A stretch of DNA of 64,000 nt from Octopus sinensis (Eukaryota), in the NCBI RefSeq assembly GCF_006345805.1, contig NC_042997.1:205158001-205222000 (forward strand). Direction: 5' to 3'. A program made the position numbers and the translations under genes. This document shows, piece after piece, positions 1 to 29,632 of this stretch (position 1 is the first letter of the stretch; each line of letters opens with the position of its first letter). The notes beneath the pieces are model-generated. The model was not told the DNA's origin and ran no database searches. It was given only the letters and a program-made list of their open reading frames with translations.

Positions 1-10
1 CATACATATA

Positions 11-42
<32 letters not shown>

Positions 43-44
43 CA

Positions 45-210
45 TATATACGACAGGCTTCTTTCAGTTTCCGTCTACCAAATCCACTCACAAGGCTTTG
101 GTCGGCCCGGGGCTATAGCGGAAGACACTTGCCCAAGATGCCACGCAGTGGGACTGAACCCGGAACCATGTGGTTGGTTAGCAAGCTACTTACCACACAG
201 CCACTCCTGC
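45..210 (-). mobile_element. tRNA-derived SINE family 1 (5' head; body at 15845-16225 in copy B)
   Basis: Minus strand GGCGCAGGAGTGGCTGTGTGG...GGTTCAGTCCC gives A-box and B-box-like motifs; many similar copies in the window. Confidence 0.85.
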
Positions 211-239
211 GCCTTTTCAAGTATGCGATTCCATCTGAA

Positions 240-665
240 TCTTTATTATTATTGCTATTATTATTTATTGTCTTTACTCAGCTTCTAACGCTGGAGATAT
301 GCTACGGTGTCAGCTGTTCACTCCCAGTAAACTAAGGTAACACCCCCTTATTTTTCGAGTACCATCCGGAGTATTCGAGCGGTTCTAAGCAGTGCTGTTT
401 TTTGCAAGTGCTCCACCCTTTTTGCAGTCTCTATTTGTTCCATGTACTTCTCAAGATTTTTACTCACTGTTCAATTATTGGTACTACTACCACCTTTTTC
501 AGCGCTCACAACTGCTTAACCTCCCAAGCTAACCCGTCATAGCAATCGACTTTTCTTTCTTCTTTATCGCATACCTTGTTGTCAGCTGGGCAAGCTATAT
601 CTATGATCCAGCAACGTCTGATTTCTTTCTCAACGATATTCGTTTGCTTTCTTTCTCAATGAACA
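240..665 (-). mobile_element. R4/Dong-clade LINE 3' fragment (copy at ~16253-16680)
   Basis: Minus strand encodes IIDIACPADNKVCDKEERK...KKVVVVPII...LQKTALLRTARILRMVL (restriction-like endonuclease C-terminus); flanked by (TAA)n. Confidence 0.75.
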
Positions 666-833
666 CTATTATTATTATTATTATTATTATTAATATATTT
701 AAAAAAGGATTGACATAACTCTTCCCAAAGGTAAACAGTCAAGACGAAGAGCGCGATTCGATTGTAAGATATTTTATTAGTTGAACGATATTTCAAGAAC
801 ATGGTTTCAGACGCTGATTGATCGTGTCTTATC

Positions 834-893
<60 letters not shown>

Positions 894-1870
894 CTGCGGC
901 CTTAGATATTCTGAATGATAAATGGCAAGAAAAACCTCTCTATGGCAAATACCCAAAGAGAGCGAATAATGCAGATATTGACAAAGCCCTGACCCATCAA
1001 TGGCTAGTGGCCTCTGGCTTAAAATCTGAAACAGAGGGGTTTATCATAGCAGCTCAAGATCAATGCCTACCAACAAGAAACTACCGGGCCAACATATTAA
1101 ATACCAGCAGCAGTCCAACGTGTCGTGTATGCCGACAACAAAATGAAACCATTGATCATGTGGTCTCCAAGTGCAGTCTTCTAGCGCCTACAGAGTATCT
1201 CAACAGGCACGATAGAGCTGCACAATATATTCACTGGGTAATCTGCAAAAACCTGGATTTACCCCATGAAAAAAACTGGCGGGAACACAAACCACCCCCA
1301 GTGCTTGAAAATGACCACATCTCACTCCTCTGGAACTTCACCATTCAAACTGACAGAAAGATAGATGCAAATAGGCCAGACATCATATTGAAAGACTTCA
1401 ACAAAGAACATGCCTCCTCATTGATATGACTGTCCCAATCGATATAAACGTATCTGTCAAGACCTACCAAAAACTGAGCAAATATAAAGATCTTGAAATA
1501 GAAATCAGCAAAATGTGGAACCTGAAGACTAAAACAATACCTGTTGTCATAGGTTCCCTGGGAATGATAGCAAAAGGGGCTGATAGCTACCTAACTCAGA
1601 TACCAGGAAACCCCAAAATGGCAGAAATTCAAAAGGTAGTGCTCTTGGGAACTGCTCATATCCTACGCAAAATACTTTCTATGTAATCTCAAGGTTTAAA
1701 ACAAACATTTGTTTTCTTTTTTTTTCAGACATCCACCAGTACAACACAAAAAACAACCAAATATATGGCACACTAGGCATAACAACAACGTGAACTTCCA
1801 GCCTGTTGTCTCTTGAGGTCTCCGGGTGAGACTTGGAGCCAACTTGTACAAATATAAAGCAAAATCAAAC
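894..1870 (+). mobile_element. 5'-truncated R4/Dong-clade LINE (CCHC finger + RLE endonuclease), copy at 16975-17951
   Basis: GLKSETEGFIIAAQDQCL, CRVC..ETIDHVVSKC, RHD, NRPDIILKD, KLSKYKDL, IPVVIGSLG; one frameshift at ~1415; (TAA)n on both sides. Confidence 0.9.
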
Positions 1871-1914
1871 ATAATAATAATAATAACAACAACAATAACA
1901 ACAATAATAATAAC

Positions 1915-1970
<56 letters not shown>

Positions 1971-1972
<2 letters not shown>

Positions 1973-2174
1973 TTATTGTATACAGTACTCAGGTGCACCA
2001 CAACTTGTCAAACGTGCGTATAAAGCATCTGCAGTAATGTACAAATGTCTGGAAAGTGAACAGTGTATGACTCAGATACATGCTTGCATATGTATGGAGG
2101 GGAGAAAATCAGGTGTAGTGATGGCCAATCTCAAGAAGCATGGAAGTTTTGAATGATGCAGTGCTCCGACAACT
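1971..2174 (-). mobile_element. CR1-type LINE 3' end, short copy (also ~18135-18345)
   Basis: Near-identical to 2920-3130; (ATT)n tail. Confidence 0.8.
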
Positions 2175-2868
2175 GAACGATATTTCAACAGTACGTCTGT
2201 CTTTGTCAAGTTCAAAATAAGAGGTGAAAAAAATTCAAAATTACAGAAATTTAAACGTAAAGTATGAACGAGAGCAGCCAGCGTCCACACGTTGATGGGA
2301 TAACATCATCAGTTTTTAAGTTACGATTTTATAACAGGTGAAAAGAAAAAGACAAAAAAAACAGAAAAAAGAAGACGACAGAAAAAAGGAAAGAAAAGGA
2401 GAGAAAGAAGAATATCTAATCAAACAGTTTTGTATGAATTTGATGATATTCTCCTGTCATTTTATTCATTCCTCCAGGGCGTGATGTTAATAACCCACAA
2501 ACATATTTCTCCTCATGCATTTTGAGAAGTGAAAGTGAAGCAGATTCAGAATATTTTCTGAGAATATGCACTTTCAAGTCTTCTTCATAATTGCAGCGAA
2601 ATGTTCGGCAAATTCTGTCGAACTACTGTTATTGTGCCTGACGTCGAATCTGAGCCCATTAAACCTTTTGTTTAATTGTTCGAGATGCCATTTATTTATT
2701 CGAAAATAAATGTCATCTACATTCGTAATATTCTTTTCTGTAATTAGTATTATTATTTATCATTACTTAATTAATATAGTAGTTTTCAGTCAAAACAATA
2801 ACAATTGCTACAGTCATGACCAAGATTCCAAGAACATGGTTTCGGACGCTGATTGATCGTGTCTTATC

Positions 2869-2919
<51 letters not shown>

Positions 2920-2921
<2 letters not shown>

Positions 2922-3445
2922 AATTATTGTATACAGTGCTCAGGTGCACCACAACTTGTCAAAAGTGCGTATAAAGCATCTGCAGTAATGTACAAATGTC
3001 TGGAAAGTGAACAGTGTATGAGTCAGATACATGCTTGCGTGTGTATGGAGGAGAGAAAATCAGGTGTAGTGTTGGCGAATCTCAGGAAGCATGGAAGTTT
3101 TGAAGGATGCAGTGCTCCAACAACTAACAACTGATGCCGGCAGTTTGTTCCATGCTTCAGCAACTCTTAGCGTGAAAAAATGTTTCCGAAAGTCATGGAA
3201 GGAGCTGTGCTGTTTTCTGACTTTGTAAACATGTCCACGGGTGTTAGACAGGTGGAGTTTGAAGAGGTGCTCAGAGTTATTGTTTGTGAGATGGTTAATA
3301 ATTTTATGGGTGTCTGCCAAGTCAGCTGCCAGACGTCGGGGTTTCAATGTATCCTTGCCCAGGGAAGTAAGGCGTTCAGAATATGGCAAACGCCTGATGG
3401 AGGGAATTCCCTTGGTTGCACGTCGCTGAACGGCTTCCAGACGAT
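2920..3445 (-). mobile_element. CR1-type LINE 3' end (also ~19092-19617)
   Basis: LEAVQRRATK.IP.I..LPYSERL..L...TL..RRL..DL...HKII...TRGH..K....FF.LRV.EAWN.LP, typical CR1/L2 RT C-terminus; (ATT)n tail. Confidence 0.9.
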
Positions 3446-3479
3446 ATGTTTGTGCGTGTGTCTGTAAATGCTTATGCCC

Positions 3480-3790
3480 GCGTGTGTGTGTGTGTTTGTA
3501 TGTATGTGAATGAGTGTGTGTGTGTGTTTGTATATATATATATGTGTGTGTGTGTGTGAGTGTTTGTTTGTATGTGTGGGAACATGTGTGTGAATGTATG
3601 TGTGAGTGTGTGCATGTGTGTGTGTGGGGGGTGTATGTGGGTTTGTGTGAGTGTTTGTGTGGGCGTGTGTGTGTGTGTTTGTGTGTGCATGGGTGTGTAA
3701 GTATGTGAGTGTGTGTGTTAGTGTGTGTGTTCGTGTTCATGTGTGTGTGTGCGTGTGTGTACGTGTGTGCGCGAGTGCATGTGCGTGTGT
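3480..3790. repeat. Imperfect (GT)n microsatellite (also ~19652-19962)
   Basis: Direct reading; explains the spurious HT/CV-rich ORFs. Confidence 0.95.
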
Positions 3791-3909
3791 ACCTTTATAT
3801 TTGCAAGTGGTCATTCGAAGGTCACTGCTCCATCATTCGTTGAAAGAAAGAATTTGAACTAAAGATTTATAAAACTTGTTTCTTTTAATGAGATTCTTTA
3901 TCTCTATAG

Positions 3910-3966
<57 letters not shown>

Positions 3967-5034
3967 TACATACATATATACATACATTTTCAAGAGACGT
4001 CATTGATGTCTGTCATTGTATTGAGAATGATGTCCCTAAAGTAGAAAAATCTCTAGCAACATTTGGGGCTTGTTTGAATTGAATAAATTGATGTCGCTGT
4101 GGTGGAAAAATCTATGGTTATTTAGCATTAGAGAGAATCCATTCCATTTTAAAAGAAGCTGTGATGTTTGTAATTTGAAAGACAGCCTCTTCTTGCAAGA
4201 CGGCAGGGAAGTGGAGAGCCTCCCTGTATTGAGTGTTCCGTACCCTTCTTAGAAATGGGCCCCCGATATCAAAGAAGCGCCAATATCGATGGGTCCTCAA
4301 ATATCGCGTGGGATCCCAATATCGCGGGGTCTGCCAATATCAAGGGAGCTCAGGAGAATTGTCCTTGGCACCCCTATAAACAGTGCAACATAGAATATCC
4401 TCTGCCTGTTACAAGACATTCAGTGAAGCATGGACTCGAAAGTCCGCATGAGAACACAGTGCCACTAAGAAACTTTACTAATTCAAAATTATTCCTAGCT
4501 TCATACATCTGCGTTTTCAATTCGAATATGGCCTCGTTCAAATGTCATTCCAGTTTCACAGGTTTTCATACAATTATTAACATTTATAAATTAGGAACAG
4601 AGTAAATCCAAAGATTGATTGCAATCACAAAATCCTCAAGAATTCACTAAACTTTAAATTAGAAAATATTACAACAAAAAATAGAGAGAAAGTTCGTTAC
4701 AGCAAAATATAAACAATTCCTCTGCCTCGCTGGCCACAATACTTCTTTTTATTAGAAAAATAAACAATAAAATAGATTTACATTCAGTTTATAATGAATA
4801 CTTTCCGGAATTTCTTGCAATTAAAAGTTTCTCAGAACCCATTTAATGGTAAATGAGGAATGAATACAACAAAAATCAATGGAGAAATGGAAACAACAAA
4901 ACAAGATTTCCTGGGATATATCGACCAAAATATTTATGTATATTAATTAATTTACATTTTACTTTAAATAAATATTCTCCATTTCAAAAACTTACAAAAT
5001 GAAGAAAATACATTATTCTTCATTAATTTGACTT

Positions 5035-5057
5035 GTTCAATCTTTCTTTATTTACAG
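5035..5057 (+). promoter_or_regulatory. 3' splice acceptor of a 5'-UTR intron, copy 1
   Basis: Polypyrimidine tract TCTTTCTTTATTTACAG ending at 5057, followed by 10 nt then ATG; same geometry in the inverted paralog. Confidence 0.7.
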
Positions 5058-5067
5058 ATAACCAAAT

Positions 5068-7290
5068 ATGGCTGCCATGCAGACGATAACAGCAGCGACC
5101 AGTTCTCTTATTCTTTCAGTCATTCTTATTGTCACACTGACATCACTAAACATCGATGCGAAGGAACTCGACAATGATTGTGAAATTCAAATTTCTCCCA
5201 ATGTCAGTGAGATTTTATTTCGTTTAGTAAAATTAGAAAAAAAGATTTTCAATTTTGAAGTTCATTTATCTGATAAAAAATTTGATAACCTACTAAACCC
5301 TATACCTTTGGATTATTTTGCAAATGCGAGACATTTTACCTGGATTCCAGATGAACCAGATGGTTTAATAGCATATAAAAAGTTTTTCTATGATTTCTCA
5401 ATTCACTCTTTTAATTTGTTAGATGTCTACATTGCTAATCCAAGGATTGATATCAATATACACTGTAGAAAACAAAATATCCAGAGACATGATTTAATAT
5501 ATTTGATTTTCGAGGAACTGAAAAAAATCTTATTTATCCCTAAATTGCATAAAGGAAAATCTGGATACATGTGTTTTTATATAAATTTGTCTTATGATAT
5601 GAAGAAGAACAACCCTAGCACCCTTGAAGCTTACAGAAGAATTGGTATAAACCGAGAGATACTGAAGAACTATTGCTGTGAGATCTATAAAAATGGAACC
5701 TATGTTTATCATCCCAAATCTATTTGTTCGGGAAAAATCATTGAAAATGCTATGTTTGTCAATTTTGAGAACATCGTTGGAGCCATTTTGTGGGCTATAT
5801 TACCATTAATTATTAGCTTTGTATCAAAAGCTAAATTACCTTCATATTCCCGTCAACTCAGTCTGCGACTGTTTGCTCAAGATGAATTCTTATTTACAAC
5901 TAAAAACACATTGCCACACGAATCAGAGTGGATCAATGAAAGCAATAATATTTACACATTCTCTCATTTTCTGTCTTGGTTGTTTTGCTTTCACCATTCC
6001 ACTCTCTTAGCCTCAAGGCTGAGAAGATTCCTTTGTATTCTATTCTCTCTTTCAGTAATTTTCCTGGATCTTTTGATGCATTACTTCTTTTTGTATGAAA
6101 CGATAGAAATACTTTTCCAAGATGGTATACCATTGGGACATCGCGCCTTAATATTAGGAATCCCAGAAAGTTATGAGAACACTGATGGCTTTTTTGGGGG
6201 TCCGTTTGCATGCTTAATCAGTTACGTATCTTTCAACTTTATCCTCTTCGTTCTTCCCAGTCGTTTAAGCGAGACTATCGCTTATAATACATTACATCAA
6301 AGATCCACTTTCACGTTTCTCATTCAAAATAAGAGATTATTAGAGAAGTATGGCAATTTAAATGTTTCTACTCTACAGGATTATGATCTACTCTATGCAA
6401 TAATGAAAGCTAATATTTCTACTGCTTTAAACCCAAATTTCTGGCATTTAATAATTTATTCTTGGATTAATCGTATAAAGCAAACTTGGTTTTATTACGA
6501 AAAGAAAAATATTTTCTGCCAATTCATATTACTTTGGTTTTTCGTTGCCATTACAATTCTATTTGTTGTATTTTCTATCTGCGAATTTTTTCTGTGTCTC
6601 CTTTATTACGGAATCCCAACTGTTTATTTGATTTTAACTTTACCAGCAAGTTATTTTAGAGTTTATATTTTCCCCCAGTATTTGAATCCTAACTATATTT
6701 TCAAGATTATTTCTGTAATTCTAACTATTCTATCATTGCCGTTTTATCTATTATGGGGACTTTATTCAGTCTATATATTTCTTACAAGTTTTCAAGCCCT
6801 TTGCAACTATGTATTTTCAATAGGTATTGCAGTTCTTGCTAAGCCTGGTACTATTGGTGATATATGGTTTGCTGTAATGTTTTTTGTCTATGGTACTGCA
6901 GTTATAAAAGCTATTCAGAAACAATATGACTCTATACTTGTTCAGTCTAGAAATTTAACCCAAACTATTCGCCCGAATTTAGTTCAGTCAAAATACGGAG
7001 AGGAATTCATAAATGCCAAGCTGTTCAAGACGATTGTTAACCATCATTTTCCATTGAGATACGAGATTGGTAAATCCATTATAAAACTGTTTCTAATCGT
7101 ATCTTTCTTCTTTGCTTGCAACAATGTAATAAATCGAAATGACTTGGCCTTATCAGCATTCACAAGGATTACTTTGATATTGATGACGTCTACCATCCCT
7201 CAATTATTGTCAATAATCAATGCTAACATTCATCTTGACAGTTCCCTTTTAGATAAAATTATTGAAACAATTAATGTGTTTAAAGAATGA
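5068..7290 (+). CDS. Uncharacterised 740-aa multi-pass membrane protein (signal peptide, Cys-containing ectodomain, ~9-10 TM segments); single coding exon, copy 1
   Basis: Uninterrupted 2223-bp ORF in otherwise repeat-rich DNA. Hydrophobic N-terminus (aa ~13-31); Cys at 38, 133, 169, 203, 204, 220; N-glycosylation sequons N45, N173, N209; many hydrophobic stretches from aa ~229. Splice acceptor 10 nt upstream of ATG and AATAAA immediately after the stop. Diverged paralogs in the window conserve the protein motifs. Confidence 0.9.
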   Translation: MAAMQTITAATSSLILSVILIVTLTSLNIDAKELDNDCEIQISPNVSEILFRLVKLEKKIFNFEVHLSDKKFDNLLNPIPLDYFANARHFTWIPDEPDGLIAYKKFFYDFSIHSFNLLDVYIANPRIDINIHCRKQNIQRHDLIYLIFEELKKILFIPKLHKGKSGYMCFYINLSYDMKKNNPSTLEAYRRIGINREILKNYCCEIYKNGTYVYHPKSICSGKIIENAMFVNFENIVGAILWAILPLIISFVSKAKLPSYSRQLSLRLFAQDEFLFTTKNTLPHESEWINESNNIYTFSHFLSWLFCFHHSTLLASRLRRFLCILFSLSVIFLDLLMHYFFLYETIEILFQDGIPLGHRALILGIPESYENTDGFFGGPFACLISYVSFNFILFVLPSRLSETIAYNTLHQRSTFTFLIQNKRLLEKYGNLNVSTLQDYDLLYAIMKANISTALNPNFWHLIIYSWINRIKQTWFYYEKKNIFCQFILLWFFVAITILFVVFSICEFFLCLLYYGIPTVYLILTLPASYFRVYIFPQYLNPNYIFKIISVILTILSLPFYLLWGLYSVYIFLTSFQALCNYVFSIGIAVLAKPGTIGDIWFAVMFFVYGTAVIKAIQKQYDSILVQSRNLTQTIRPNLVQSKYGEEFINAKLFKTIVNHHFPLRYEIGKSIIKLFLIVSFFFACNNVINRNDLALSAFTRITLILMTSTIPQLLSIINANIHLDSSLLDKIIETINVFKE

Positions 7291-7330
7291 AATAAATAAC
7301 GAAGGATTTTTTTAATTAATCAATAAAAAA
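7291..7330 (+). terminator. Candidate polyadenylation signals (also at 23463-23502)
   Basis: AATAAA at 7291-7296 directly after TGA and further AATAAA hexamers within 40 nt; AT-rich background lowers specificity. Confidence 0.35.
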
Positions 7331-7380
7331 TAAATAAATAATATTTTACTATTATTCTTTTCGTTTTTTTTATTTGTTTC

Positions 7381-7745
7381 AGCCATTTGATTGCGGCCGT
7401 GCTTGAGCACCGCCTCTTAGACAAAGAAATCGACTTTGGGACTTATTCTTTGTAAGCCTGGTACTTATTCTGTCTGTCTCTTTTACCGAACCACTAAGTA
7501 ACGGGGACGTAAACACGCCAACATAGGTTACCAGGCTATAGTGGTGGGGGGACAAGCAGAAACACATAAATATATACATATTCATATACGACAGGTTTCT
7601 TTCAGTTTCCGTCTACCAAATCCACTCATAAGGCTTTAGTCGGCCCGAGGCTACAGTAGAAGACACTTGCCCTAAGTGCGACACAGTGGGACTGAACCCG
7701 GAATTATGCGGACGGTTGGGAAGAAAGCTTCTTACCACACAGCCA
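7381..7745 (-). mobile_element. SINE family 1 (also ~23553-23917)
   Basis: Same head and body as 15845-16225. Confidence 0.85.
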
Positions 7746-8148
7746 AACCTAGAAATTATTTCATCTTTTTTAAATACATTGTAAACTTTTAATAAAGCCG
7801 ATCTCTATTGATATATATATATACAGAAACACAAAAAGCTTGACTGAAATATATGTAAAGTGTTACACATACCCAGCATCATAAATATGTACATGCATAT
7901 GTATGGTAAATATACATGCGTAAATATACATATATATATATATATATCTATATATATATATATATATATGTACGTATGTATGTATGTAGTATGTATGTAT
8001 GTATGTATATGTATGTATGTATGTATGTACGTATGTATGTATGTATGTATGTATGTATATGTATGTATGTATGTATGATGTATGTATGTATGTATGTATG
8101 TATGTATGCTTTCACGGCGCCGTTTTTACAATCCTGTAAATAATAATA

Positions 8149-8406
8149 ATGGTATTTTCATATAAGCTCAGAGCTTATGTCGATCACCGTGCAATGACTA
8201 AGGAAAATAGTCTAATAAAGGGGCATCTAAGCCCTCGACAGAAAAAAGAAGGCTTTCCTATCTGCGTGGGGGTCGAACCCACATCTCTACTCCTATGCAG
8301 ATAGGAAAAGCTTTTTTCTGTCGAGAGCTTATATGTCCCTTTATTAGACTATTTTCCTTAGTCACTGCACGGTGATCGTCATAAGCTTCAAGCTTATATA
8401 ACAATA

Positions 8407-8410
<4 letters not shown>
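8149..8410. mobile_element. Palindromic MITE-like element (also 24189-24449)
   Basis: ~115-bp imperfect inverted arms (ATGGTATT...AATACCAT) around a short centre; ends at (TA)n. Confidence 0.75.
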
Positions 8411-8489
<79 letters not shown>

Positions 8490-9384
8490 ATATATATATA
8501 TACATCTATATATATATATATACATCTATATATGCATATATACATAAGTATATGTACATACTTACATCTATACGTATATACATATGAATATGTGGGAACA
8601 GTACGTCACGGAATGTAAACATAACAAACGAAATACCAATACATGGAATATGAACTTTCTTTGCAAAAACGAAAGAAACAAATGGAAAACAAGACAAGTA
8701 ACATAACGAATGACCCTTCATCAGTTGTCGGCTGTTTTTCTAATCCGTATTTCGAGCAATTCAACGACAAGATACGCCTTCGATAGAACACTTGCTCTCA
8801 CGAAGCAATTTCTATAAAATTTGGGATTTTGTGGTGATGTGGCCAACGCGGAGAAACAAGCTTGGACAGGAGACAGACAAGAATACGTCTGATTCCTTCA
8901 GCTGCAACAGAAAGAAAGAGAAAGAAAAAATATACGAGTGTGTATATACACATATAGATATATAGATATGCATGCTATTTATTAGAAACAAAGATTTCTG
9001 TTAAAACCCCAGGGGGATAACTTTACCACGACGACTATTATCATTACTGCTGCTAGTTATTGAACTGCTCCAGCCACTGCTATAGAAAACAGTCTTGACC
9101 ACACTACTTAATTTACCATCACGGACAGTAGTAATTTGCCATCACAGACAGTGCCACTAGTAATGCCACGAAAATTAAAGGAAATTACCTGCTCTTGCAG
9201 GAAAAAAGAAAGTAAACTATGAACGTTTATTTTAATAATTTTATTAATAACTTTTTCTCTACATCTTCCAATTTTTTGATAATGTTTTTCAAAAACCGAA
9301 ACATGTAAAACAAAAACATTTTTCTTTTAATGTATTTATAAAAAGAAATACAAATGTATCTAATTTTCGTTCTTCTTTTTCATA

Positions 9385-9935
9385 TATATATAGGGGTTGG
9401 ATGAGTCTAATGGTGATTACGAATGTACGGCAGCTCGGAAAACTCACTCTGATCATTCTGTTAAGAAAAGAACTTCTGAATTTGTTGGTGAGATCCAGGC
9501 CATGATTGACAATGATGCCTCCAAGTCAATCAGGTCCATCACCAGGGACATGGAAGTGTCTGAGTTTCTTATCGGGCAGGTAGTGCATGAAGACATTCAA
9601 CATTCCTCATACAAAATGAGAAAAGGCCACTTTTTGTCCCAATTCCTCAAGGACAAGAGGAAACACCGTGCCACGAAGCTTTTGAACAAACCCAGTCATC
9701 CCCTCCAACTGAACATGCATTGGTTTTTCTCAGACGAGAAAAAATTTCTGCCAGGATCAGATGGTGATAAAATTCAAACATTCAGCCAACATCCGAGACT
9801 CAACTCGGAGGCCTACATCAAGTGCATGGAGGAGGTAGTGCTGCCCTGAGTCAAAAGAGTGGCTGGTGGAAGACCCGATGTTTGGCAACAGCACTCTGCA
9901 CCATGCCGCATAAGCAACAGTACTCAGTCTTTCCA
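9385..9935 (+). mobile_element. Tc1/mariner (DD37D/maT-like) transposase remnant; longer version at 25515-26315
   Basis: KSIRSITRDMEVSE (HTH), SYKMRKGHFL, WFFSDEK (first catalytic D), RLNSEAY..VLP, VAGGRP.VWQQ; TA-CAGGGG start in copy B. Confidence 0.85.
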
Positions 9936-10135
9936 TCTCCTTATTCGTTTACTCCCTTCCTCTTTTTTGTCATCTTATTGATATATACCATTCTCATTTT
10001 CCATATTTTCCCCCCTTATTTTGTCTCTGATGACGGAATATCTCGTATTCGGGGAGATATCCCACAAACAGCTGTAAGATCATGAATTTCTTCCTGTAAT
10101 AATATTGTATATGACTTGAGTTGTTTGCCATTATG
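9935..10135 (+). repeat. Hammerhead-containing repeat; inverted copy at ~13950-14200 (B: ~26315-26520 and ~30345-30600)
   Basis: 9935-10100 is the reverse complement of 14005-14200 (about 85% by eye). Confidence 0.7.
10023..10080 (+). ncRNA. Type I hammerhead-ribozyme-like motif, degenerate (GAAA>CAAA); also 26401-26458
   Basis: GTCT-CTGATGA-stem II (GGAATATCTC/GAGATATCC)-CAAAC-AGCT-GTA-AGAT. Confidence 0.55.
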
Positions 10136-10148
10136 CGTGACGTCCTGT

Positions 10149-10221
<73 letters not shown>

Positions 10222-10890
10222 TGAAATGCGTTTTTACCGCTTGGATCGCTCCAAAATTTACAGGGACATGTAGAATGAGGTGACGATGCCCGTGGGCTAC
10301 CTTAGAATCCCTATCTTAAAAGGTGTGGTTGCTAGGGGCCATCTTCCTCACTCACGCTATTTCCTCCTTTCCCTCTCTTACTCCCCTTCATATTAACTTT
10401 GAGAAGTCCACTCCCGTTATTTAATGTATTCCCCTCAACTCCCTTTCACTTTCCCTTTATAAGTTCATCAGACGGCTTTCTTTGATGTATCTATCTGCAT
10501 TCATATGAGAATTATCATCGCTACCAACAACACACAATCATGAGAACAAATATTATGAATCAGATATTCATTGCGTTCATTTATATATGTGTGTGTGTGT
10601 TCGATATATAAATATGTATATATAATGTATATATACAAAGTGCATATATCTGTATTTATGTATATTAAACTTTTTAATACTTTTTGATAGTTATATATAT
10701 TTTTAAACAAATTATAACTATAATTTAATAATTTTTATTTTAAATTTAAATAATTTAAATTTTTCAATTTTATACATTTTCTATATTATATTTTTATTTT
10801 TATGTTTTTTTTTGTTTTTTTTTTGGCCTATTAGTGGTTTTATCTCTAATTTAATTTATACATATATATAATTTGTATATATAATGCGTG

Positions 10891-10924
<34 letters not shown>

Positions 10925-10977
10925 ATGTGTGCATTATGTGGTCGGTCGGTTCAGCTGAAAATATGCACACCTATGAA

Positions 10978-12061
10978 CCCTTTCGTTACTATATTTCTGA
11001 CCAAAATACCCCTTATGTGTTTCAATTAATTTCTAACATAATCATAAATTTAGTCTGGTTTCATTAAACAACTATAACTTTTTTATTTATCGATATATTA
11101 ATCTGATTTTTGGAAGATAATTTAATGAAATATTCTCAACCAATTCTATACTATAATTTTTGTCACAAAGTGACTCTAATTGCAGGTAGATACAGGTAAA
11201 TTCAACAAAATATAAAATTATTAAAATTTTGTTCAAACATCGCTATAGAAAATGGGTTATTAGCTAATATTCAATTGGGTATACAACAAAATTTTACGAT
11301 AGAATTTGTTATTCTGGGTAACTTTCTGATACCCATGATAATATTTATGGCAAAATAGTCTTAATTTCATTTAAGGTTGTGGGAAACCACTTTCTATCCT
11401 TTCTTTCGCTTTGTTTATATTTAGCGTAACGGTTCGTTTCCGCCGTAATGATTTCAAATAGGCTCATTGGAAAAGTAAAAAGAAATAGTCTAAAGCTTTA
11501 CTCTCCTGGGAAAATCTGTGGCTTGGTCCAGTTTCTTCAGAAAAATCACCGAAAGAAACAGTTTTTCAATTTTCACTCCATTCAGGTGCCAATTCATTTT
11601 CTTTATCGCTGTCGGAGCTCTCGAATTCACTGTTTTCACTTTCGGAAAATGAAACATCAGATTCATTATCAAATACCACGTGCTTTTTTTTTTCAGTCAT
11701 AGAGTTAGATTTATCAAGGTCTTCAGTAGAAAATCCTTCGAATTCTGACTCGCTGCTTGATATGATGAAATTCGTATCCATTTTTTGTCAGAATTACAAA
11801 GTTTGAAAACACAATAGGAACAAATTTTGGAAAAAAATCTCCCATAATTCACGGAATTAAAATTACACTTCGATCGTTGTACAAAACTGTAGTTGAACTG
11901 TTTACGAAGTATAATCACGTGTTTTCACGAATGTAATAAAGAGATTTGCTCTGATATTCTCATTTAAATATGAATAGGTAAATACGGACGGGTTTGGGCG
12001 GTTTGGTCACATTAACCAAAATTTTTTTCGGGCGGCTTTGGGCGGTTTGGTAACGAAAGGG
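10978..12061 (-). mobile_element. Internally deleted piggyBac element (also 27399-28484)
   Basis: TIR CCCTTTCGTTAC / GTAACGAAAGGG; right TTAA target, left TGAA. Acidic N-terminus SSESEFEGF and LDYFFLLFPMSLFEIITAETNRYAK, typical of piggyBac N-termini; subterminal GGGCGGTTTGG repeats. Confidence 0.88.
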
Positions 12062-12839
12062 TTAAAAGTGCTGGCAAGTTTGCATGACAACTATTTTTTT
12101 CCTCAAATGAAAGGCATGACCTCTAGGAAAAATTTCTCATCTTATAAAATGTGGCCCCAGTAGACCCGAATGAAATCGGGTTATATTAACCAAAAGGTAA
12201 AAAGGGGTATAAATGGGGCTGGAAGGGGATTAAAATTTAAAGGAGCGAGTGTTTAGGAATTCTCTGTTACATCAAGCTAAAAAATTTGCGCCAGCCTTTT
12301 AATCTTCAATGTGTTGCCGTCCATGATGAAGAGGTTTTGAATGCTTGCCATAGTAAGTCTACTGTCGTGAGAAAGAATCACTTCAAAACTTGGTGTTTAC
12401 GAATTTTCTTTTCCATCAAGTTCAAAATTTTACGCCAGCCGTTAAACTGTCAATACGTTGCTGTCCGTCGTTAAGAAATGCCAGTCATGGTGACTCTACT
12501 ATCCTCAGATTCTATCCCTTCAAACTTTGCTTTCCAATATTTTATTATTTTTATTCAGCTCGCAAGTTCGTCTGTCCCTTTTAAATGTTAGTGTTTTGCT
12601 GTCTGCCTTGAAGCAGACATTTCCGTTGTTACTGCCTGATATTTATGATTGATCTTTCTAAATATTTTATTTCTCAACTTACTCAAGATCTTTTGTTGTT
12701 TATAAATGGGAGAGAAATAGATAAAGATAGAGAGTAAGAGAAAGCGAGGGAGAGTCCGAGAGAAAAGAAAAGTAAGAGAGTGGGAAAGTGAGAGAGAAAG
12801 GAGAGAGAAACAAAGAGGGAGAATCATCATCATCATCAT

Positions 12840-13190
12840 CGTTTAACGTCCGTTTTCCGTCCTAGCACGGGTTGGACAGTTTGACCGGGGTCTGGGAAGC
12901 CAGGAGGCTGCACCAGGCTCCAGTCTGATCTGGCAGTGTTTCTACAGGTGGATGACCTTCCTAACGCCAACCACTCTGTGAGTGTAGTGGGTGCTTTTTT
13001 CGTGCCGCCGGCACAGATGCCAGGGGGGCTCGCAGCAGCAACGATGGTTGGTGCTTTTTACGTGCCACTGGTACAGAAGCCAGTCAAGGCGGCGCTGCAA
13101 TCGGCCACGTTCGGATGGTGCTTTTTACGTGCTGAAAGGAAGCAACAGAAAGTAACAACCACACTCTTACCCGCGCGTAGAGCGGGTCAC
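12840..13190 (-). mobile_element. SINE-like interspersed repeat (also ~29228-29580)
   Basis: Contains GGATGACCTTCCTAACGCCAACC, internal tandem GGTGCTTTTTACGTGCC units and a (CAT)n tail; family name not certain. Confidence 0.55.
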
Positions 13191-13199
13191 CTTCAGCTA

Positions 13200-13240
<41 letters not shown>

Positions 13241-13243
<3 letters not shown>

Positions 13244-13907
13244 ATGGTGCGGTGAATAAACTGTTATCTAAATTAACACAAAAATGAAAATAACACTGAT
13301 GTCTTATTTTAACAGATATATTAACCAAAATTACATAAAGATATCTTGAAATACTAAAGAGTAAATATATTCAATAAAATCACAATTGGTTTCAACCACT
13401 GCCTTCAGATGACTTCGGAATCTCCTGCAACTCTTCTGTACGGTCTCCTTGTTTAAGTTGGCGAATGCTGCCATAATCCTTGCCTTCAGTTCATACTTGG
13501 TAATACAATTGTTTGGCAGCCTCATGAGGCTGCTAGACAATTCCTGCGACCACATCACTCCTAAGGTCTGGCCACCTAGTTCCCCAGATTGCCATCCACT
13601 TGGCTATTATGTGTGGGGCTCAGTTGAGCGAGAAGCCAGCAAAACTCCTTGTATTACCAAGTATGAACTGAAGGCAAGGATTATGGCAGCATTTCCAACT
13701 TAAACAAGGATACCGTACAGAAGAGTTGCAGGAGATTCCGAAGTCACTTGAAGGCAGTGGTTGAAACCAATTGTGATTTTATTGAATACATTTACTCTTT
13801 AGTATTTCAAGATATCTTTATGTAATTTTGGTAAATATATCTGTTAAAATGAGATGTCAGTGTTATTTTAATTTTTGCGTAATTTAGATAACAGTTTATT
13901 CACTACA

Positions 13908-13914
<7 letters not shown>
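13241..13914. mobile_element. Fold-back element made from two mariner 3' ends (also 29630-30303)
   Basis: 13241-13507 is the reverse complement of 13650-13914; spacer encodes VWPPSSPDCHPLGYYVWG; embedded in (TA)n. Confidence 0.88.
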
Positions 13915-13951
<37 letters not shown>

Positions 13952-14023
13952 CAAGACGTCAAGCATAAAGGCAAGGCAAACATTTCAAGTCATATACAAT
14001 ATTATTACAGGAAGAAATTCATG

Positions 14024-14079
14024 GTCTTACAGCCGTTTCTGAGATATCCCCAAGTATGTGATATTCTGTCATCAGAGAT
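14024..14079 (-). ncRNA. Type I hammerhead-ribozyme-like motif with intact core; also 30421-30476
   Basis: Minus: ATCT-CTGATGA-CAGAATATC...GATATCTCA-GAAAC-GGCT-GTA-AGAC. Confidence 0.65.
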
Positions 14080-14251
14080 GAATAGGGGAAAAAAATATGG
14101 AAAATGCGAATGGTATATATCAATAAGATGACAACAAAGAGGAAGGGAGTAAAAGAATAAGGAGATGGAAAGAGAGAAGAAACACGAAGCATAAACGTTC
14201 ATAGCTCAACTTACCGAAGTTATGGAAGCCAAAGCAGGAGTCCTTAGGTGC

Positions 14252-16004: not shown

Positions 16005-16055
<51 letters not shown>

Positions 16056-16225
16056 CATATATACGACAGGCTTCTTTCAGTTTCCGTCTACCAAATCCAC
16101 TCACAAGGCTTTGGTCGGCCCGGGGCTATAGCGGAAGACACTTGCCCAAGATGCCACGCAGTGGGACTGAACCCGGAACCATGTGGTTGGTTAGCAAGCT
16201 ACTTACCACACAGCCACTCCTGCGC
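15845..16225 (-). mobile_element. SINE family 1, full length
   Basis: GTTTCAGTCATTTGACTGCGGCCATGCTGGAGCACCGCC...CCACACAGCCACTCCTGCGCC. Confidence 0.88.
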
Positions 16226-16679
16226 CTTTTCAAGTATGCGATTCCATCTGAATCTTTATTATTATTGCTATTATTATTTATTGTCTTTACTCAGCTTCTA
16301 ACGCTGGAGATATGCTACGGTGTCAGCTGTTCACTCCCAGTAAACTAAGGTAACACCCCCTTATTTTTCGAGTACCATCCGGAGTATTCGAGCGGTTCTA
16401 AGCAGTGCTGTTTTTTGCAAGTGCTCCACCCTTTTTGCAGTCTCTATTTGTTCCATGTACTTCTCAAGATTTTTACTCACTGTTCAATTATTGGTACTAC
16501 TACCACCTTTTTCAGCGCTCACAACTGCTTAACCTCCCAAGCTAACCCGTCATAGCAATCGACTTTTCTTTCTTCTTTATCGCATACCTTGTTGTCAGCT
16601 GGGCAAGCTATATCTATGATCCAGCAACGTCTGATTTCTTTCTCAACGATATTCGTTTGCTTTCTTTCTCAATGAACAC

Positions 16680-16752
<73 letters not shown>

Positions 16753-16891
16753 ATATTTAAAAAAGGATTGACATAACTCTTCCCAAAGGTAAACAGTCAA
16801 GACGAAGAGCGCGATTCGATTGTAAGATATTTTATTAGTTGAACGATATTTCAAGAACATGGTTTCAGACGCTGATTGATCGTGTCTTATC

Positions 16892-16974
<83 letters not shown>

Positions 16975-18078
16975 CTGCGGCCTTAGATATTCTGAATGAT
17001 AAATGGCAAGAAAAACCTCTCTATGGCAAATACCCAAAGAGAGCGAATAATGCAGATATTGACAAAGCCCTGACCCATCAATGGCTAATGGCCTCTGGCT
17101 TAAAATCTGAAACAGAGGGGTTTATCATAGCAGCTCAAGATCAATGCCTACCAACAAGAAACTACCGGGCCAACATATTAAATACCAGCAGCAGTCCAAC
17201 GTGTCGTGTATGCCGGCAACAAAATGAAACCATTGATCATGTGGTCTCCAAGTGCAGTCTTCTAGCGCCTACAGAGTATCTCAACAGGCACGATAGAGCT
17301 GCACAATATATTCACTGGGTAATCTGCAAAAACCTGGATTTACCCCATGAAAAAAACTGGTGGGAACACAAACCACCCCCAGTGCTTGAAAATGACCACA
17401 TCTCACTCCTCTGGAACTTCACCATTCAAACTGACAGAAAGATAGATGCAAATAGGCCAGACATCATATTGAAAGACTTCAACAAAGAACATGCCTCCTC
17501 ATTGATATGACTGTCCCAATCGATATAAACGTATCTGTCAAGACCTACCAAAAACTGAGCAAATATAAAGATCTTGAAATAGAAATCAGCAAAATGTGGA
17601 AGCTGAAGACTAAAACAATACCTGTTGTCATAGGTTCCATGGGAATGATAGCAAAAGGGGCTGATAGCTACCTAACTCAGATACCAGGAAACCCCAAAAT
17701 GGCAGAAATTCAAAAGATAGTGCTCATGGGAACTGCTCATATCCTACGCAAAATACTTTCTATGTAATCTCAAGGTTTAAAACAAACATTTGTTTTCTTT
17801 TTTTTTCAGACATCCACCAGTACAACACAAAAAACAACCAAATATATGGCACACTAGGCATAACAACAACGTGAACTTCCAGCCTGTTGTCTCTTGAGGT
17901 CTCCGGGTGAGACTTGGAGCCAACTTGTACAAATATAAAGCAAAATCAAACATAATAATAATAATAACAACAACAATAACAACAACAATAATAACAATAA
18001 CAACAATAATAATAATAATAATATAATAATAATAATAACAACAACAATAACAACAACAATAATAATAACAATAACAAC

Positions 18079-18136
<58 letters not shown>

Positions 18137-19040
18137 TTATTGTATACAGTACTCAGGTGCACCACAACTTGTCAAACGTGCGTATAAAGCATCTGCAGTA
18201 ATGTACAAATGTCTGGAAAGTGAACAGTGTATGACTCAGATACATGCTTGCATATGTATGGAGGGGAGAAAATCAGGTGTAGTGTTGGCCAATCTCAAGA
18301 AGCATGGAAGTTTTGAATGATGCAGTGCTCCGACAACTAACAACTGAACGATATTTCAACAGTACGTCTGTCTTTGTCAAGTTCAAAATAAGAGGTGAAA
18401 AAAATTCAAAATTACAGAAATTTAAACGTAAAGTATGAACGAGAGCAGCCAGCGTCCACACGTTGATGGGATAACATCATCAGTTTTTAAGTTACGATTT
18501 TATAACAGGTGAAAAGAAAAAGACAGAAAAAAACAGAAAAAAGAAGACGACAGAAAAAAGGAAAGAAAAGGAGAGAAAGAAGAATATCTAATCAAACAGT
18601 TTTGTATGAATTTGATGATATTCTCCTGTCATTTTATTCATTCCTCCAGGGCGTGATGTTAATAACCCACAAACATATTTCTCCTCATGCATTTTGAGAA
18701 GTGAAAGTGAAGCAGATTCAGAATATTTTCTGAGAATATGCACTTTCAAGTCTTCTTCAAAATTGCAGCGAAATGTTCTGCAAGTTTTGTCGAACTACTG
18801 TTATTGTGCCTGACGTCGAATCTGTGCCCATTAAACCTTTTGTTTAATTGTTCGAGATGACATTTATTTATTCGAAAATAAATGTCATCTACATTCGTAA
18901 TATTCTTTTCTGTAATTAGTATTATTATTTATCATTACTTAATTAATATAGTAGTTTTCAGTCAAAACAATAACAATTGCTACAGTCATGACCAAGATTC
19001 CAAGAACATGGTTTCGGACGCTGATTGATCGTGTCTTATC

Positions 19041-19093
<53 letters not shown>

Positions 19094-20081
19094 AATTATT
19101 GTATACAGTGCTCAGGTGCACCACAACTTGTCAAAAGTGCGTATAAAGCATCTGCAGTAATGTACAAATGTCTGGAAAGTGAACAGTGTATGAGTCAGAT
19201 ACATGCTTGCGTGTGTATGGAGGGGAGAAAATCAGGTGTAGTGTTGGCGAATCTCAGGAAGCATGGAAGTTTTGAAGGATGCAGTGCTCCAACAACTAGC
19301 AATTGATGCCGGCAGTTTGTTCCATGCTTCAGCAACTCTTAGCGTGAAAAAATGTTTCCGAAAGTCATGGAAGGAGCTGTGCTGTTTTCTGACTTTATAA
19401 ACATGTCCACGGGTGTTAGACAGGTGGAGTTTGAAGAGGTGCTCAGAGTTATTGTTTGTAAGATGGTTAATAATTTTATGGGTGTCTACCAAGTCAGCTG
19501 CCAGACGTCGGGGTTTCAATGTATCCTTGCCCAGGGAAGTAAGGCGTTCAGAATATGGCAAACGCCTGATGGAGGGTATTCCCTTGGTTGCACGTCGCTG
19601 AACGGCTTCCAGACGATATGTTTGTGCGTGTGTCTGTAAATGCTTATGCCCGCGTGTGTGTGTGTGTTTGTATGTATGTGAATGAGTGTGTGTGTGTGTT
19701 TGTATATATATATATGTGTGTGTGTGTGTGAGTGTTTGTTTGTATGTGTGGGAACATGTGTGTGAATGTATGTGTGAGTGTGTGCATGTGTGTGTGTGGG
19801 GGGTGTATGTGGGTTTGTGTGAGTGTTTGTGTGGGCGTGTGTGTGTGTGTTTGTGTGTGCATGGGTGTGTAAGTATGTGAGTGTGTGTGTTAGTGTGTGT
19901 GTTCGTGTTCATGTGTGTGTGTGCGTGTGTGTACGTGTGTGCGCGAGTGCATGTGCGTGTGTACCTTTATATTTGCAAGTGGTCATTCGAAGGTCACTGC
20001 TCCATCATTCGTTGAAAGAAAGAATTTGAACTAAAGATTTATAAAACTTGTTTCTTTTAATGAGATTCTTTATCTCTATAG

Positions 20082-20138
<57 letters not shown>

Positions 20139-21206: not shown

Positions 21207-21229
21207 GTTCAATCTTTCTTTATTTACAG
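21207..21229 (+). promoter_or_regulatory. 3' splice acceptor of a 5'-UTR intron, copy 2
   Basis: Identical to 5035-5057. Confidence 0.68.
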
Positions 21230-21239
21230 ATAACCAAAT

Positions 21240-24445: not shown

Positions 24446-24526
<81 letters not shown>

Positions 24527-25432: not shown

Positions 25433-25484
<52 letters not shown>

Positions 25485-26525: not shown

Positions 26526-26565
<40 letters not shown>

Positions 26566-27288: not shown

Positions 27289-27345
<57 letters not shown>

Positions 27346-29588: not shown

Positions 29589-29632
<44 letters not shown>

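What the first reader, a model, noticed from the sequence alone, without database searches (positions are those of the whole stretch)
5068..7290. Unassigned single-coding-exon, multi-pass membrane protein forming a tandem gene family
Seen: cleavable-looking signal peptide (~aa 1-31) and a ~200-aa ectodomain with six Cys (38, 133, 169, 203/204, 220), all retained in the diverged paralog. Hydrophobic segments at about aa 229-252, 321-343, 379-397, 483-505, 507-530, 543-575, 578-592, 599-617, 672-687 and 700-720. I recognise no GPCR, Cys-loop, TRP, transporter or DEG/ENaC signature. Inference: a single coding exon, local multi-copy array, pseudogenes and a Cys-stabilised ectodomain on a polytopic core are the pattern of birth-and-death sensory or immune-recognition receptor and channel families. 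This is the best candidate in the window for an undescribed receptor/channel system. I have an unverified recollection of similar uncharacterised proteins in other marine invertebrates (YD.....L.LL, SRLRR, GGP and LF..IV..H.P.R-like motifs).
Basis: partly seen in the sequence, partly recalled or inferred. Interest (0 to 1): 0.85.

Follow-up and report, generated by a model that had tools for sequence, protein, structure and literature searches.

The report
Orphan octopus membrane-protein gene family
The window holds intact, selectively constrained copies of an intronless gene for a large multi-pass membrane glycoprotein; it belongs to an undescribed family found in molluscs, annelids, brachiopods and nemerteans, has no detectable relative of known function or structure, and has multiplied in octopuses.

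Summary
Window 5068..7290 (+) is an intact 740-aa ORF, with an identical copy at 21240..23462 inside a ~16.2-kb tandem duplication. A frameshifted pseudogene lies at 39133..41281 (-) and a fragment at 32526..33458. The genome (Octopus sinensis) has about 19 intact intronless copies plus many pseudogenes, mostly in a ~430-kb array. Paralog dN/dS is 0.40, so these are real genes.

An exhaustive HMMER search finds 158 clusters. Every named member is lophotrochozoan (gastropod, bivalves, annelid, brachiopod, nemertean), and all are "uncharacterized".

Two O. bimaculoides homologs are auto-labelled "STRA6" in UniRef. I tested this and reject it: no Pfam PF14752 hit, no profile hit to 5SY1, and hhalign probability 0.5% against 100% for a within-family control.

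Two confident AlphaFold models (pTM 0.82 and 0.78) have no Foldseek match in the PDB or BFVD (viral models).

The architecture is an N-terminal signal sequence, a glycosylated ~195-aa ectodomain with six conserved Cys, about nine helices, and a conserved cytoplasmic module.

The function is untested. A ligand-sensing surface receptor or channel is my best guess (~0.4).

The parts
5040..5057 (+). Polypyrimidine tract plus TTACAG: putative 3' splice acceptor 10 nt upstream of the ATG. It implies a non-coding 5' exon with the whole CDS in the terminal exon.
   Evidence: Sequence. The motif (Y-tract)ACAG|A(T/A)AAC(C/G)AAAT-ATG is conserved in most of 15 paralogs although the sequence further upstream has diverged. 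Inferred; no RNA data.
5068..7290 (+). Gene copy A: intact 740-aa CDS in one exon.
   Evidence: AlphaFold pLDDT 86.7, pTM 0.82.
5068..5160 (+). N-terminal hydrophobic signal sequence (aa 1-31); either a cleaved signal peptide or a signal anchor.
   Evidence: Hydropathy peak at aa 2-32; helix 2-29 in the model; an equivalent helix 7-29 in the annelid model. Cleavage not tested.
5161..5745 (+). Alpha/beta ectodomain (aa 32-226) with six conserved Cys (38, 133, 169, 203, 204, 220), W92, and enriched N-glycosylation sequons.
   Evidence: Sequons occur at 2.2 per 100 aa here against 0.4-0.8 in other loops.
5746..7287 (+). Helical membrane core and cytoplasmic module (aa 227-740). TM1 228-253; disordered loop 254-312; TM2 313-341 (SRxxR); TM3 375-395 (GGP); cytoplasmic helices 400-478 (NPxFW...R469); TM4 482-515 (E506); TM5 517-538; long helices 543-591 and 593-634; beta-hairpin 639-649; TM8 663-690; TM9 697-718; C-terminal helix 725-739.
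   Evidence: Topology is inferred from the positive-inside rule and the sequon distribution.
7291..7296 (+). AATAAA polyadenylation signal immediately after the stop codon, with further copies up to about 7345.
   Evidence: Sequence. Inferred.
21240..23462 (+). Gene copy B: CDS identical to copy A at every nucleotide.
1..14251 (+). First unit of a ~16.2-kb tandem segmental duplication, paired with 16014..30648.
   Evidence: Most 500-bp windows are 98-100% identical; the lower windows coincide with microsatellites and indels.
16014..30648 (+). Second unit of the tandem duplication.
32526..33458 (+). Pseudogene fragment of the family (aligns to aa 342-670, 49% identity, 5 stops).
39133..41281 (-). 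Full-length pseudogene, 85% nt identity to copy A, with more than 10 frame changes and in-frame stops at codons 466 and 632. It still carries the codons of most family-defining residues.

Best explanation
Shown: the window carries two identical, intact copies and two dead copies of a gene from an undescribed family. The family is, as far as seen, restricted to lophotrochozoans, and the whole CDS lies in one exon. The product is a ~740-aa polytopic glycoprotein with a confidently predicted fold that has no detectable solved or described relative. The octopod repertoire forms a single clade that expanded by tandem and segmental DNA duplication. It has about 19 intact loci plus many pseudogenes and is kept under purifying selection (omega about 0.4).

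Inferred topology: the N-terminal signal sequence puts a disulfide-stabilised, N-glycosylated alpha/beta ectodomain of ~195 aa outside the cell or in the lumen. About nine helices follow. The K/R-rich 398-481 helical module, the 618-662 hairpin and the C-terminus lie in the cytoplasm.

Inferred mechanism (my commitment, about 40%): it is a cell-surface sensor. The ectodomain keeps a conserved disulfide scaffold but has a variable surface, and it binds an extracellular ligand. The signal passes through the helical core, where a nearly invariant intramembrane acidic residue (E506, at the tight TM4-TM5 turn EffxCxxYYGxP) and a partly conserved base in TM8 (K673) are the only conserved charges. 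It then reaches the most conserved part of the protein, the cytoplasmic module (SRxxR, NPxFW...R469, hairpin/HxPxR), which either gates an ion path or engages an intracellular partner. Copy-number expansion would then diversify ligand specificity.
For: The gene is real and constrained: the ORF is intact. Fifteen distinct intact paralog ORFs of 731-752 aa were extracted. Median dN/dS is 0.40, range 0.28-0.61.

Family size: 75 loci were found, with about 19 full-length open frames, mainly at C1 204.92-205.35 Mb. The nearest outgroup protein finds only these same loci, at 30-40% identity. Octopod sequences are monophyletic with support 100.

Wider family: 158 clusters at E<=1e-3 and 62 at <=1e-30. 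Named members are Haliotis, Ostrea, Mercenaria, Mya, Potamilus, Owenia, Lingula and Tubulanus, all 'uncharacterized'. The CDS is also uninterrupted in an unnamed relative (748 aa in 2247 nt), in the annelid Owenia (830 aa in 2493 nt) and in the oyster.

No known family or fold: Pfam gives 0 hits for 41 members. PDB sequences give no hit by single sequence or by profile. Two independent AlphaFold models (pLDDT 86.7/pTM 0.82 and 79.0/pTM 0.78) share the same order of secondary-structure elements. Their best Foldseek results are E 0.59 and 1.6 against the PDB, with TM-scores <=0.10, and E 0.5 against viral models.

Topology: sequons are enriched about 3-5 fold in the ectodomain, and loops 398-481 and 618-664 are net positive.

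Conserved residues are listed.

Receptor-like evolutionary mode: tandem arrays, pseudogenes, recent duplicates, a single coding exon and a moderate omega.
Against: Nothing here shows ligand binding, surface localisation or signalling. There are no expression data for the octopus genes; exact-sequence look-ups in the public assemblies found nothing.

The ectodomain is not the fastest-evolving part. Variability among paralogs peaks in the long helix 541-590, in residues 601-640 and in the C-terminus, and no window reaches pN/pS > 1. So the signature of diversifying ligand recognition is absent at this resolution.

The membrane core is very hydrophobic with few conserved polar residues. That fits a lipid or hydrophobic-ligand handler at least as well as an aqueous ion pore.

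Confidence: 0.4

Rival explanations
1. It is a transporter, or a docking-and-transfer receptor for a hydrophobic cargo. This would work like STRA6 without being related to it: the ectodomain docks a soluble carrier or particle, and the hydrophobic helical core passes a lipid-like molecule into the membrane.
For: The core is strongly hydrophobic, with only one nearly invariant charge (E506) and a few Tyr/Ser. The two ~45-residue helices are conserved in both models. The domain layout, an ectodomain plus about 9 helices with N-out/C-in, resembles uptake receptors in outline. An automated pipeline attached a STRA6 name to two orthologs.
Against: There is no sequence, profile or fold similarity to STRA6 or to any transporter. 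No internal sequence repeat of the kind common in secondary transporters was found. A family of about 19 intact copies with many pseudogenes is unusual for a nutrient-uptake protein.
Confidence: 0.25
2. It is an intracellular (secretory-pathway or lysosomal) membrane enzyme or housekeeping membrane protein. The conserved E506, R317/R320, R469, Y608, Y620 and H/R664 would form an active site.
For: The best-conserved positions sit at membrane boundaries and on the cytoplasmic side rather than in the ectodomain. The conserved Glu, Arg and Tyr residues are compatible with catalysis.
Against: Housekeeping enzymes are rarely restricted to one animal superphylum. They are also rarely intronless, multi-copy, arrayed in tandem with pseudogenes, and evolving at omega 0.4. 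There is no match to any enzyme family or fold.
Confidence: 0.12
3. It is a very divergent member of the STRA6/STRA6-like retinol-uptake receptor family, as the UniRef names of two O. bimaculoides orthologs suggest.
For: The UniRef names of P0004 and P0008. The size and the approximate helix count (about 9, N-out/C-in) are similar; the STRA6 figures come from established knowledge of the zebrafish structure 5SY1.
Against: Pfam PF14752 gives no hit at E<=10 in 21 members and E<=0.01 in 20 more. It does not ring at any of the ~75 loci in the genome. The family profile does not hit 5SY1, although 5SY1 is in the library. With filters off, HMMER reaches at most 7.2 bits in either direction, against about 0 bits for shuffled controls. 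hhalign probability is 0.2-0.5%, whereas the same method links octopod to non-cephalopod family members (<20% identity) at 100%, E 8e-62. 5SY1 is absent from the top 50 Foldseek hits of both models.
Confidence: 0.03
4. The ORFs are passengers or relics of a mobile element or virus, or are non-functional.
For: The genes are intronless, multi-copy and dispersed to several chromosomal sites, and the array is littered with LINE/RT remnants.
Against: Selection is purifying. Homology between diverged copies stops at the CDS, apart from a conserved splice-acceptor-like motif. There is no viral fold match. Intact orthologous ORFs occur in four phyla.
Confidence: 0.04
5. This concerns only the two identical copies in the window. 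The A/B tandem duplication could be an assembly artefact, with two haplotypes laid side by side, rather than two genes.
For: The units are 98-100% identical over most of 14 kb, and the differences are concentrated in microsatellites and indels. That is what heterozygous haplotypes look like.
Against: A third copy differing by 2 nt lies about 163 kb away in inverted orientation with the same neighbouring fragment. Another pair of identical paralogs lies about 50 kb apart. So very recent segmental duplication does occur in this array.
Confidence: 0.2

Closest known systems
STRA6 / STRA6-like retinol-uptake receptors (Pfam PF14752; zebrafish structure 5SY1)
   Same: It is the only functional name any database attaches to this family (UniRef names of two O. 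bimaculoides orthologs). It is a polytopic protein of similar length with about nine helices and a probable N-out/C-in orientation.
   Different: No similarity is detectable by HMM, by profile-profile comparison or by Foldseek. From established knowledge, STRA6 has no signal peptide and no 200-aa Cys-stabilised ectodomain, and it is a multi-exon gene. This family has both features and a single coding exon.
Single-exon, tandemly arrayed chemoreceptor families (vertebrate OR/TAAR/T2R GPCRs; expanded cephalopod GPCRs and nicotinic-receptor-like chemotactile receptors)
   Same: The evolutionary mode is the same: an intronless CDS, tandem arrays, frequent pseudogenes, lineage-specific expansion and a moderate omega.
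   Different: The fold is different. It is not 7TM and not Cys-loop (no Pfam or Foldseek match). It has about nine helices and a large N-terminal alpha/beta ectodomain, and no excess ectodomain variability was seen.
Ectodomain-plus-polytopic-core proteins (for example SID-1/SIDT, Wntless and GOLD-domain 7TM proteins)
   Same: The overall layout matches: signal sequence, a folded luminal or extracellular domain, then a multi-helix core.
   Different: Those ectodomains are beta-rich, while this one is alpha/beta with three probable disulfides. None of them appears among the listed Foldseek hits. The resemblance is architectural only, and it rests on my recollection of those families.
TRPC channels and type-IV ABC exporters (top Foldseek hits)
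   Same: They have long transmembrane helices.
   Different: E-values are 0.6-6, probabilities <=0.08, TM-scores <=0.10 and rmsd 20-36 A. The two family models hit different families, which is how noise behaves.

Membership tests
STRA6 / RBP receptor (PF14752) | Match to the Pfam RBP_receptor model | tested here: not met
   0 hits at E<=10 or E<=1 for 21 members and at E<=0.01 for 20 more. The model does not ring at any family locus in the genome. A genuine STRA6 scores E 2e-261.
STRA6 / RBP receptor (PF14752) | Profile-profile similarity to STRA6 sequences | tested here: not met
   hhalign probability 0.18%, and 0.5% with zebrafish added. The positive control within the family gives 100%, E 8e-62. 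Unfiltered HMMER gives <=7.2 bits. The STRA6 profile was shallow (mammals plus zebrafish).
STRA6 / RBP receptor (PF14752) | Fold similarity to the solved structure 5SY1 | tested here: not met
STRA6 / RBP receptor (PF14752) | Binding of retinol-binding protein and calmodulin; retinol transfer | not testable with these tools
   Needs biochemistry.
7TM GPCR chemoreceptors | Seven-helix fold / Pfam 7tm families | tested here: not met
   No Pfam 7tm hit. The only GPCR structure listed by Foldseek has E 5.5 and TM 0.08. The model has about nine helices.
Cys-loop / nicotinic-like chemotactile receptors | Beta-sandwich ligand-binding domain plus four TM helices (Pfam Neur_chan_LBD / Neur_chan_memb) | tested here: not met
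   No Pfam hit. The ectodomain is alpha/beta and the core has about nine helices.
TRP channels | Six-TM voltage-sensor-like plus pore fold | tested here: not met
   TRPC hits only at E 0.6-6 with TM-score 0.06-0.08. They are absent from the top hits of the second model.
Secondary transporters with internal repeats | Detectable internal duplication of helix bundles | tested here: inconclusive
   hhalign between helix blocks gives probabilities <=0.6%.
New lophotrochozoan family (defined here) | Signal sequence; ectodomain with C38, C133, C169, C203, C204, C220 and W92; SRxxR; GGP; NPxFW...R; E506...YYGxP; P593; Y608; Y620; LF...HxPxR; P711 | tested here: met
   All are present in the window protein and are 75-100% conserved across 89 sequences from four phyla.

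The most novel reading that the evidence does not exclude
A previously unrecognised class of cell-surface receptor or ligand-gated channel with its own fold. It would have arisen in the lophotrochozoan stem lineage and been recruited in octopods, by tandem amplification to about 20 genes, for chemosensory, chemotactile or immune recognition.
Probability: 0.25. Interest if true: 0.85.

Novelty: categorically new. Interest (0 to 1): 0.66.

Why it matters
Large membrane-protein families with no Pfam model, no solved or detectable fold and no literature are now rare in animals. This one is confidently modelled, conserved across at least four lophotrochozoan phyla, and amplified in octopus, an animal known for unusual sensory receptors. 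If it is a receptor or channel, it would add a new structural class to animal sensory or immune biology, with about 20 paralogs ready to be deorphanised. If it is a transporter or an enzyme, it still defines a new fold and a clade-specific piece of membrane biology.

A practical result is that the "Receptor for retinol uptake STRA6" name carried by two orthologs in public databases is unsupported. It should not be used to infer retinoid biology in cephalopods.

Tried and rejected
STRA6 homology was rejected after six independent tests.

A viral origin found no support: the BFVD fold search gave nothing.

A transposon cassette or retrogene origin is unlikely. Paralog homology ends at the CDS, a splice-acceptor-like motif upstream of the ATG is conserved, and distant relatives are also intronless, so the structure is ancestral.

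I looked for a bridging Pfam domain among the weakest family hits and in odd gene models. There was none. The gelsolin repeats in the O. vulgaris model P0019 look like a chimeric annotation.

The ~220-aa insertion in cytoplasmic loop 1 of a subfamily is a disordered 24-aa tandem repeat, not a domain.

Internal repeats in the helix bundles were not detected.

Positive selection in the ectodomain was not seen in domain-wise or sliding-window pN/pS.

Expression evidence was sought without success. Exact-protein look-ups for the octopus genes found no contigs. Oyster Logan contigs of ~3.7 kb from ten runs share nearly the same ends and are collinear with the genome. That is compatible with an unspliced mRNA but not decisive.

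Literature searches by gene ID and by topic found no paper on the family.

The third large-database search, using the non-octopod alignment, returned only the Owenia paralogs because of the word-index limit. A profile search of the octopus genome is not supported by the tool.
Full report
1. WHAT IS IN THE SEQUENCE

Window 5068..7290 (+) is an uninterrupted 740-aa ORF.

A second CDS at 21240..23462 is identical at every nucleotide. It sits in the second unit of a ~16.2-kb tandem duplication (1..14251 paired with 16014..30648). Most 500-bp windows of the two units are 98-100% identical.

A third, full-length copy on the minus strand (39133..41281) is 85% identical at the nucleotide level. It changes frame more than ten times and has in-frame stops at codons 466 and 632. 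It is therefore a pseudogene, although it still carries the codons of most family-defining residues. A further fragment (aa 342-670, 49% identity) lies at 32526..33458.

A polypyrimidine tract ending in TTACAG lies 10 nt upstream of the ATG. This acceptor-like motif is conserved in most of 15 paralogs even where the sequence further upstream has diverged. AATAAA follows the stop codon directly. So the CDS is one exon, probably preceded by a non-coding 5' exon. The splicing is inferred, since no RNA data were available.

2. ORGANISM AND FAMILY SIZE

The closest database proteins are 'uncharacterized' Octopus sinensis gene models. The window is G000:C1:205158001-205222000.

A six-frame search of the genome finds 75 matching loci. 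About 19 have a full-length open frame in a single piece. Most lie in a ~430-kb array at C1 204.92-205.35 Mb. Smaller groups lie at C1 208.5-208.6, 213.4 and 41.4 Mb, at C5 50.25-50.34 Mb, and on unplaced scaffolds. The rest carry stops or are fragments. I extracted 15 distinct intact ORFs of 731-752 aa.

The database protein P0001 (LOC115211026) is not the window copy. It is a third near-identical copy about 163 kb away, differing by 2 nt and 2 aa.

3. ARE THEY REAL GENES?

Nei-Gojobori dN/dS over 105 paralog pairs has a median of 0.40 (range 0.28-0.61). The ectodomain gives 0.34 and the membrane part 0.38. No 30-codon window exceeds 0.81.

This is purifying selection, somewhat relaxed, as is usual in young multigene families.

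4. WIDER RELATIVES

An exhaustive HMMER search of 1.84 billion representative proteins with the octopod profile found 158 clusters at E<=1e-3 and 62 at E<=1e-30. Most are 750-880 aa long and match nearly end to end.

Every member that carries a name is lophotrochozoan:
- a gastropod (Haliotis asinina);
- bivalves (Ostrea edulis, Mercenaria mercenaria, Mya arenaria, Potamilus streckersoni);
- an annelid (Owenia fusiformis, at least 3 paralogs);
- a brachiopod (Lingula anatina);
- a nemertean (Tubulanus polymorphus).

All are 'uncharacterized' or 'hypothetical'. Many clusters are unnamed, so presence outside Lophotrochozoa cannot be excluded.

In a maximum-likelihood tree the octopod sequences form one clade (support 100). 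Three unnamed sequences are successive sisters to it. The nearest of these, P0021, finds only the same octopus loci, at 30-40% identity. The octopus repertoire is therefore one radiation from a single ancestral gene.

The CDS is also uninterrupted in P0021 (748 aa in 2247 nt), in Owenia (830 aa in 2493 nt) and in the oyster (791 aa in 2376 nt). The single coding exon is therefore ancestral and not an octopus retrogene feature.

5. THE 'STRA6' LABEL

UniRef calls two O. bimaculoides orthologs 'Receptor for retinol uptake STRA6'. This is the only functional lead in any database, so I tested it.

- Pfam PF14752 gives no hit for 41 family members across the whole similarity range. It does not ring at any family locus in the genome.
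- A human STRA6 sequence written from memory served only as bait. It scored E 2e-261 on PF14752 and retrieved genuine STRA6 proteins.
- The solved zebrafish STRA6 (5SY1) is in the PDB sequence library, yet neither family profile hits it.
- hhalign of the 89-sequence family profile against STRA6 profiles gives probability 0.2-0.5%.
- The same method links the octopod clade to non-cephalopod members (<20% identity) at 100%, E 8e-62.
- HMMER with all filters off reaches at most 7.2 bits in either direction, against about 0 bits for shuffled controls.

The label is unsupported. One caveat is that my STRA6 profile was shallow (mammals plus zebrafish). The Pfam model is the more diverse test.

6. 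STRUCTURE

AlphaFold2 with the 89-sequence alignment gives pLDDT 86.7 and pTM 0.82 for the window protein. An independent run for the annelid protein, with a 47-sequence non-octopod alignment, gives pLDDT 79.0 and pTM 0.78 with the same order of elements. The elements are:
- an N-terminal hydrophobic helix;
- an alpha/beta ectodomain of about six strands and five helices;
- TM1;
- a disordered loop;
- a helical core including two ~45-residue helices;
- a beta-hairpin;
- a final helical hairpin and a C-terminal helix.

Foldseek against 350,542 PDB chains finds nothing. The best E-values are 0.59 and 1.6, with TM-scores <=0.10. The two models hit different families (TRPC and ABC exporters), which is how noise behaves. 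The viral model library also gives nothing. No internal sequence repeat was found.

7. TOPOLOGY AND CONSERVED FEATURES (INFERRED)

N-glycosylation sequons are 3-5 times denser in the ectodomain than in any other loop. Loops 398-481 and 618-664 are net positive. With the model's nine helices this gives N-out/C-in, with the ectodomain outside.

If 543-591 were two spans, as hydropathy alone suggests, the orientation of the C-terminal third would flip. This ambiguity remains open.

Family-wide conserved positions are:
- six ectodomain Cys and W92;
- P246;
- S316-R317-x-x-R320 at the cytoplasmic start of TM2;
- G377-G378-P379 at the outer start of TM3;
- P397;
- N455-P-x-F458-W459 and R469 in the cytoplasmic helices;
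- E506 (99% acidic) and YYGxP517 at the TM4-TM5 turn;
- P593, Y608, Y620;
- I648...L652-F653...P662-x-R664;
- K673 (75% basic);
- P711.

Among octopus paralogs the most conserved parts are TM2, the cytoplasmic 398-481 module, TM4-5 and TM8-9. The most variable are helix 541-590, residues 601-640, the TM1 region and the C-terminus.

8. INTERPRETATION

Shown: this is a real, constrained, multi-copy gene of an undescribed family that is restricted to lophotrochozoans as far as seen. Its predicted fold has no detectable known relative.

Inferred: it is a surface or luminal glycoprotein with a ligand-accessible ectodomain and a conserved cytoplasmic module.

The evolutionary mode (single coding exon, tandem arrays, pseudogenes, recent duplicates, omega 0.4) is that of environment-facing receptor families. 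So I rank 'ligand-sensing receptor or channel' first, at about 0.4. I rank a hydrophobic-cargo transfer protein or transporter second (about 0.25), because the core is very hydrophobic with a single conserved charge. A membrane enzyme or housekeeping protein is third (about 0.12). STRA6 homology and mobile-element origin are each below 0.05.

The lack of excess variation in the ectodomain and the absence of any expression data are the main weaknesses of the leading hypothesis.

9. NOVELTY

Noticed in passing
window 32526-33458 (+) and G000:C1:205332489-205344499: The pseudogene fragment in the window has an identical-scoring twin at C1:205332489-205333421 (-). That twin lies next to the third near-identical gene copy (C1:205342280-205344499, -). 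So the gene-plus-fragment block also exists as an inverted segmental duplication about 150 kb away.
   Followed up: partly
codons ~391-480 and ~661-690 of the paralog alignment (window ~6238-6507 and ~7048-7137): Synonymous divergence among paralogs drops to 0.15-0.19 in these regions, against 0.3-0.44 elsewhere. This suggests gene conversion between paralogs or a nucleotide-level constraint.
   Followed up: no
L027 (G000:C9721:22500-25900), also P0011: A divergent subfamily has a 938-aa ORF. About nine tandem copies of a 24-aa unit (EPNHQQSTNEEVHLEILPSSPNSL) are inserted in the first cytoplasmic loop. There is no Pfam domain. Part of the cytoplasmic 398-481 module is shortened in this copy.
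   Followed up: partly
proteins P0004, P0008 (O. bimaculoides orthologs): The public-database name 'Receptor for retinol uptake STRA6' is not supported by any test run here. It looks like a propagated automatic annotation.
   Followed up: yes
protein P0019 (O. vulgaris): This gene model joins an N-terminal piece of the family (about 36% of the query) to gelsolin repeats (PF00626). It is probably a chimeric annotation across a pseudogene fragment.
   Followed up: partly
window 49793-50251 (+); 3060-3740 (-) and 19232-19912 (-); 53481-54275 (-): These are retroelement debris. There is a zf-RVT domain ORF (E 1.5e-8). Two duplicated 226-aa ORFs are read-through of a GT/CA microsatellite joined to what I recognise, from memory only, as a LINE-like C-terminal tail. 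A 264-aa ORF has no Pfam match.
   Followed up: partly
window 7349-7745, 15819-16216, 23521-23917, 57087-57484, 62894-63308; and 43387-44038 vs 55845-56495: A ~400-bp dispersed repeat is present in five copies at 78-86% identity. Separately, a 650-bp inverted pair is 96% identical, with the two copies 12 kb apart.
   Followed up: no
L022-L026 (Ostrea edulis locus and Logan contigs): Ten sequencing runs each yield a ~3.7-kb contig with almost the same ends, collinear with the oyster genome around the homolog (686 nt 5', 2376-nt CDS, ~675 nt 3'). This is compatible with an unspliced mRNA, but the run type is unknown.
   Followed up: partly
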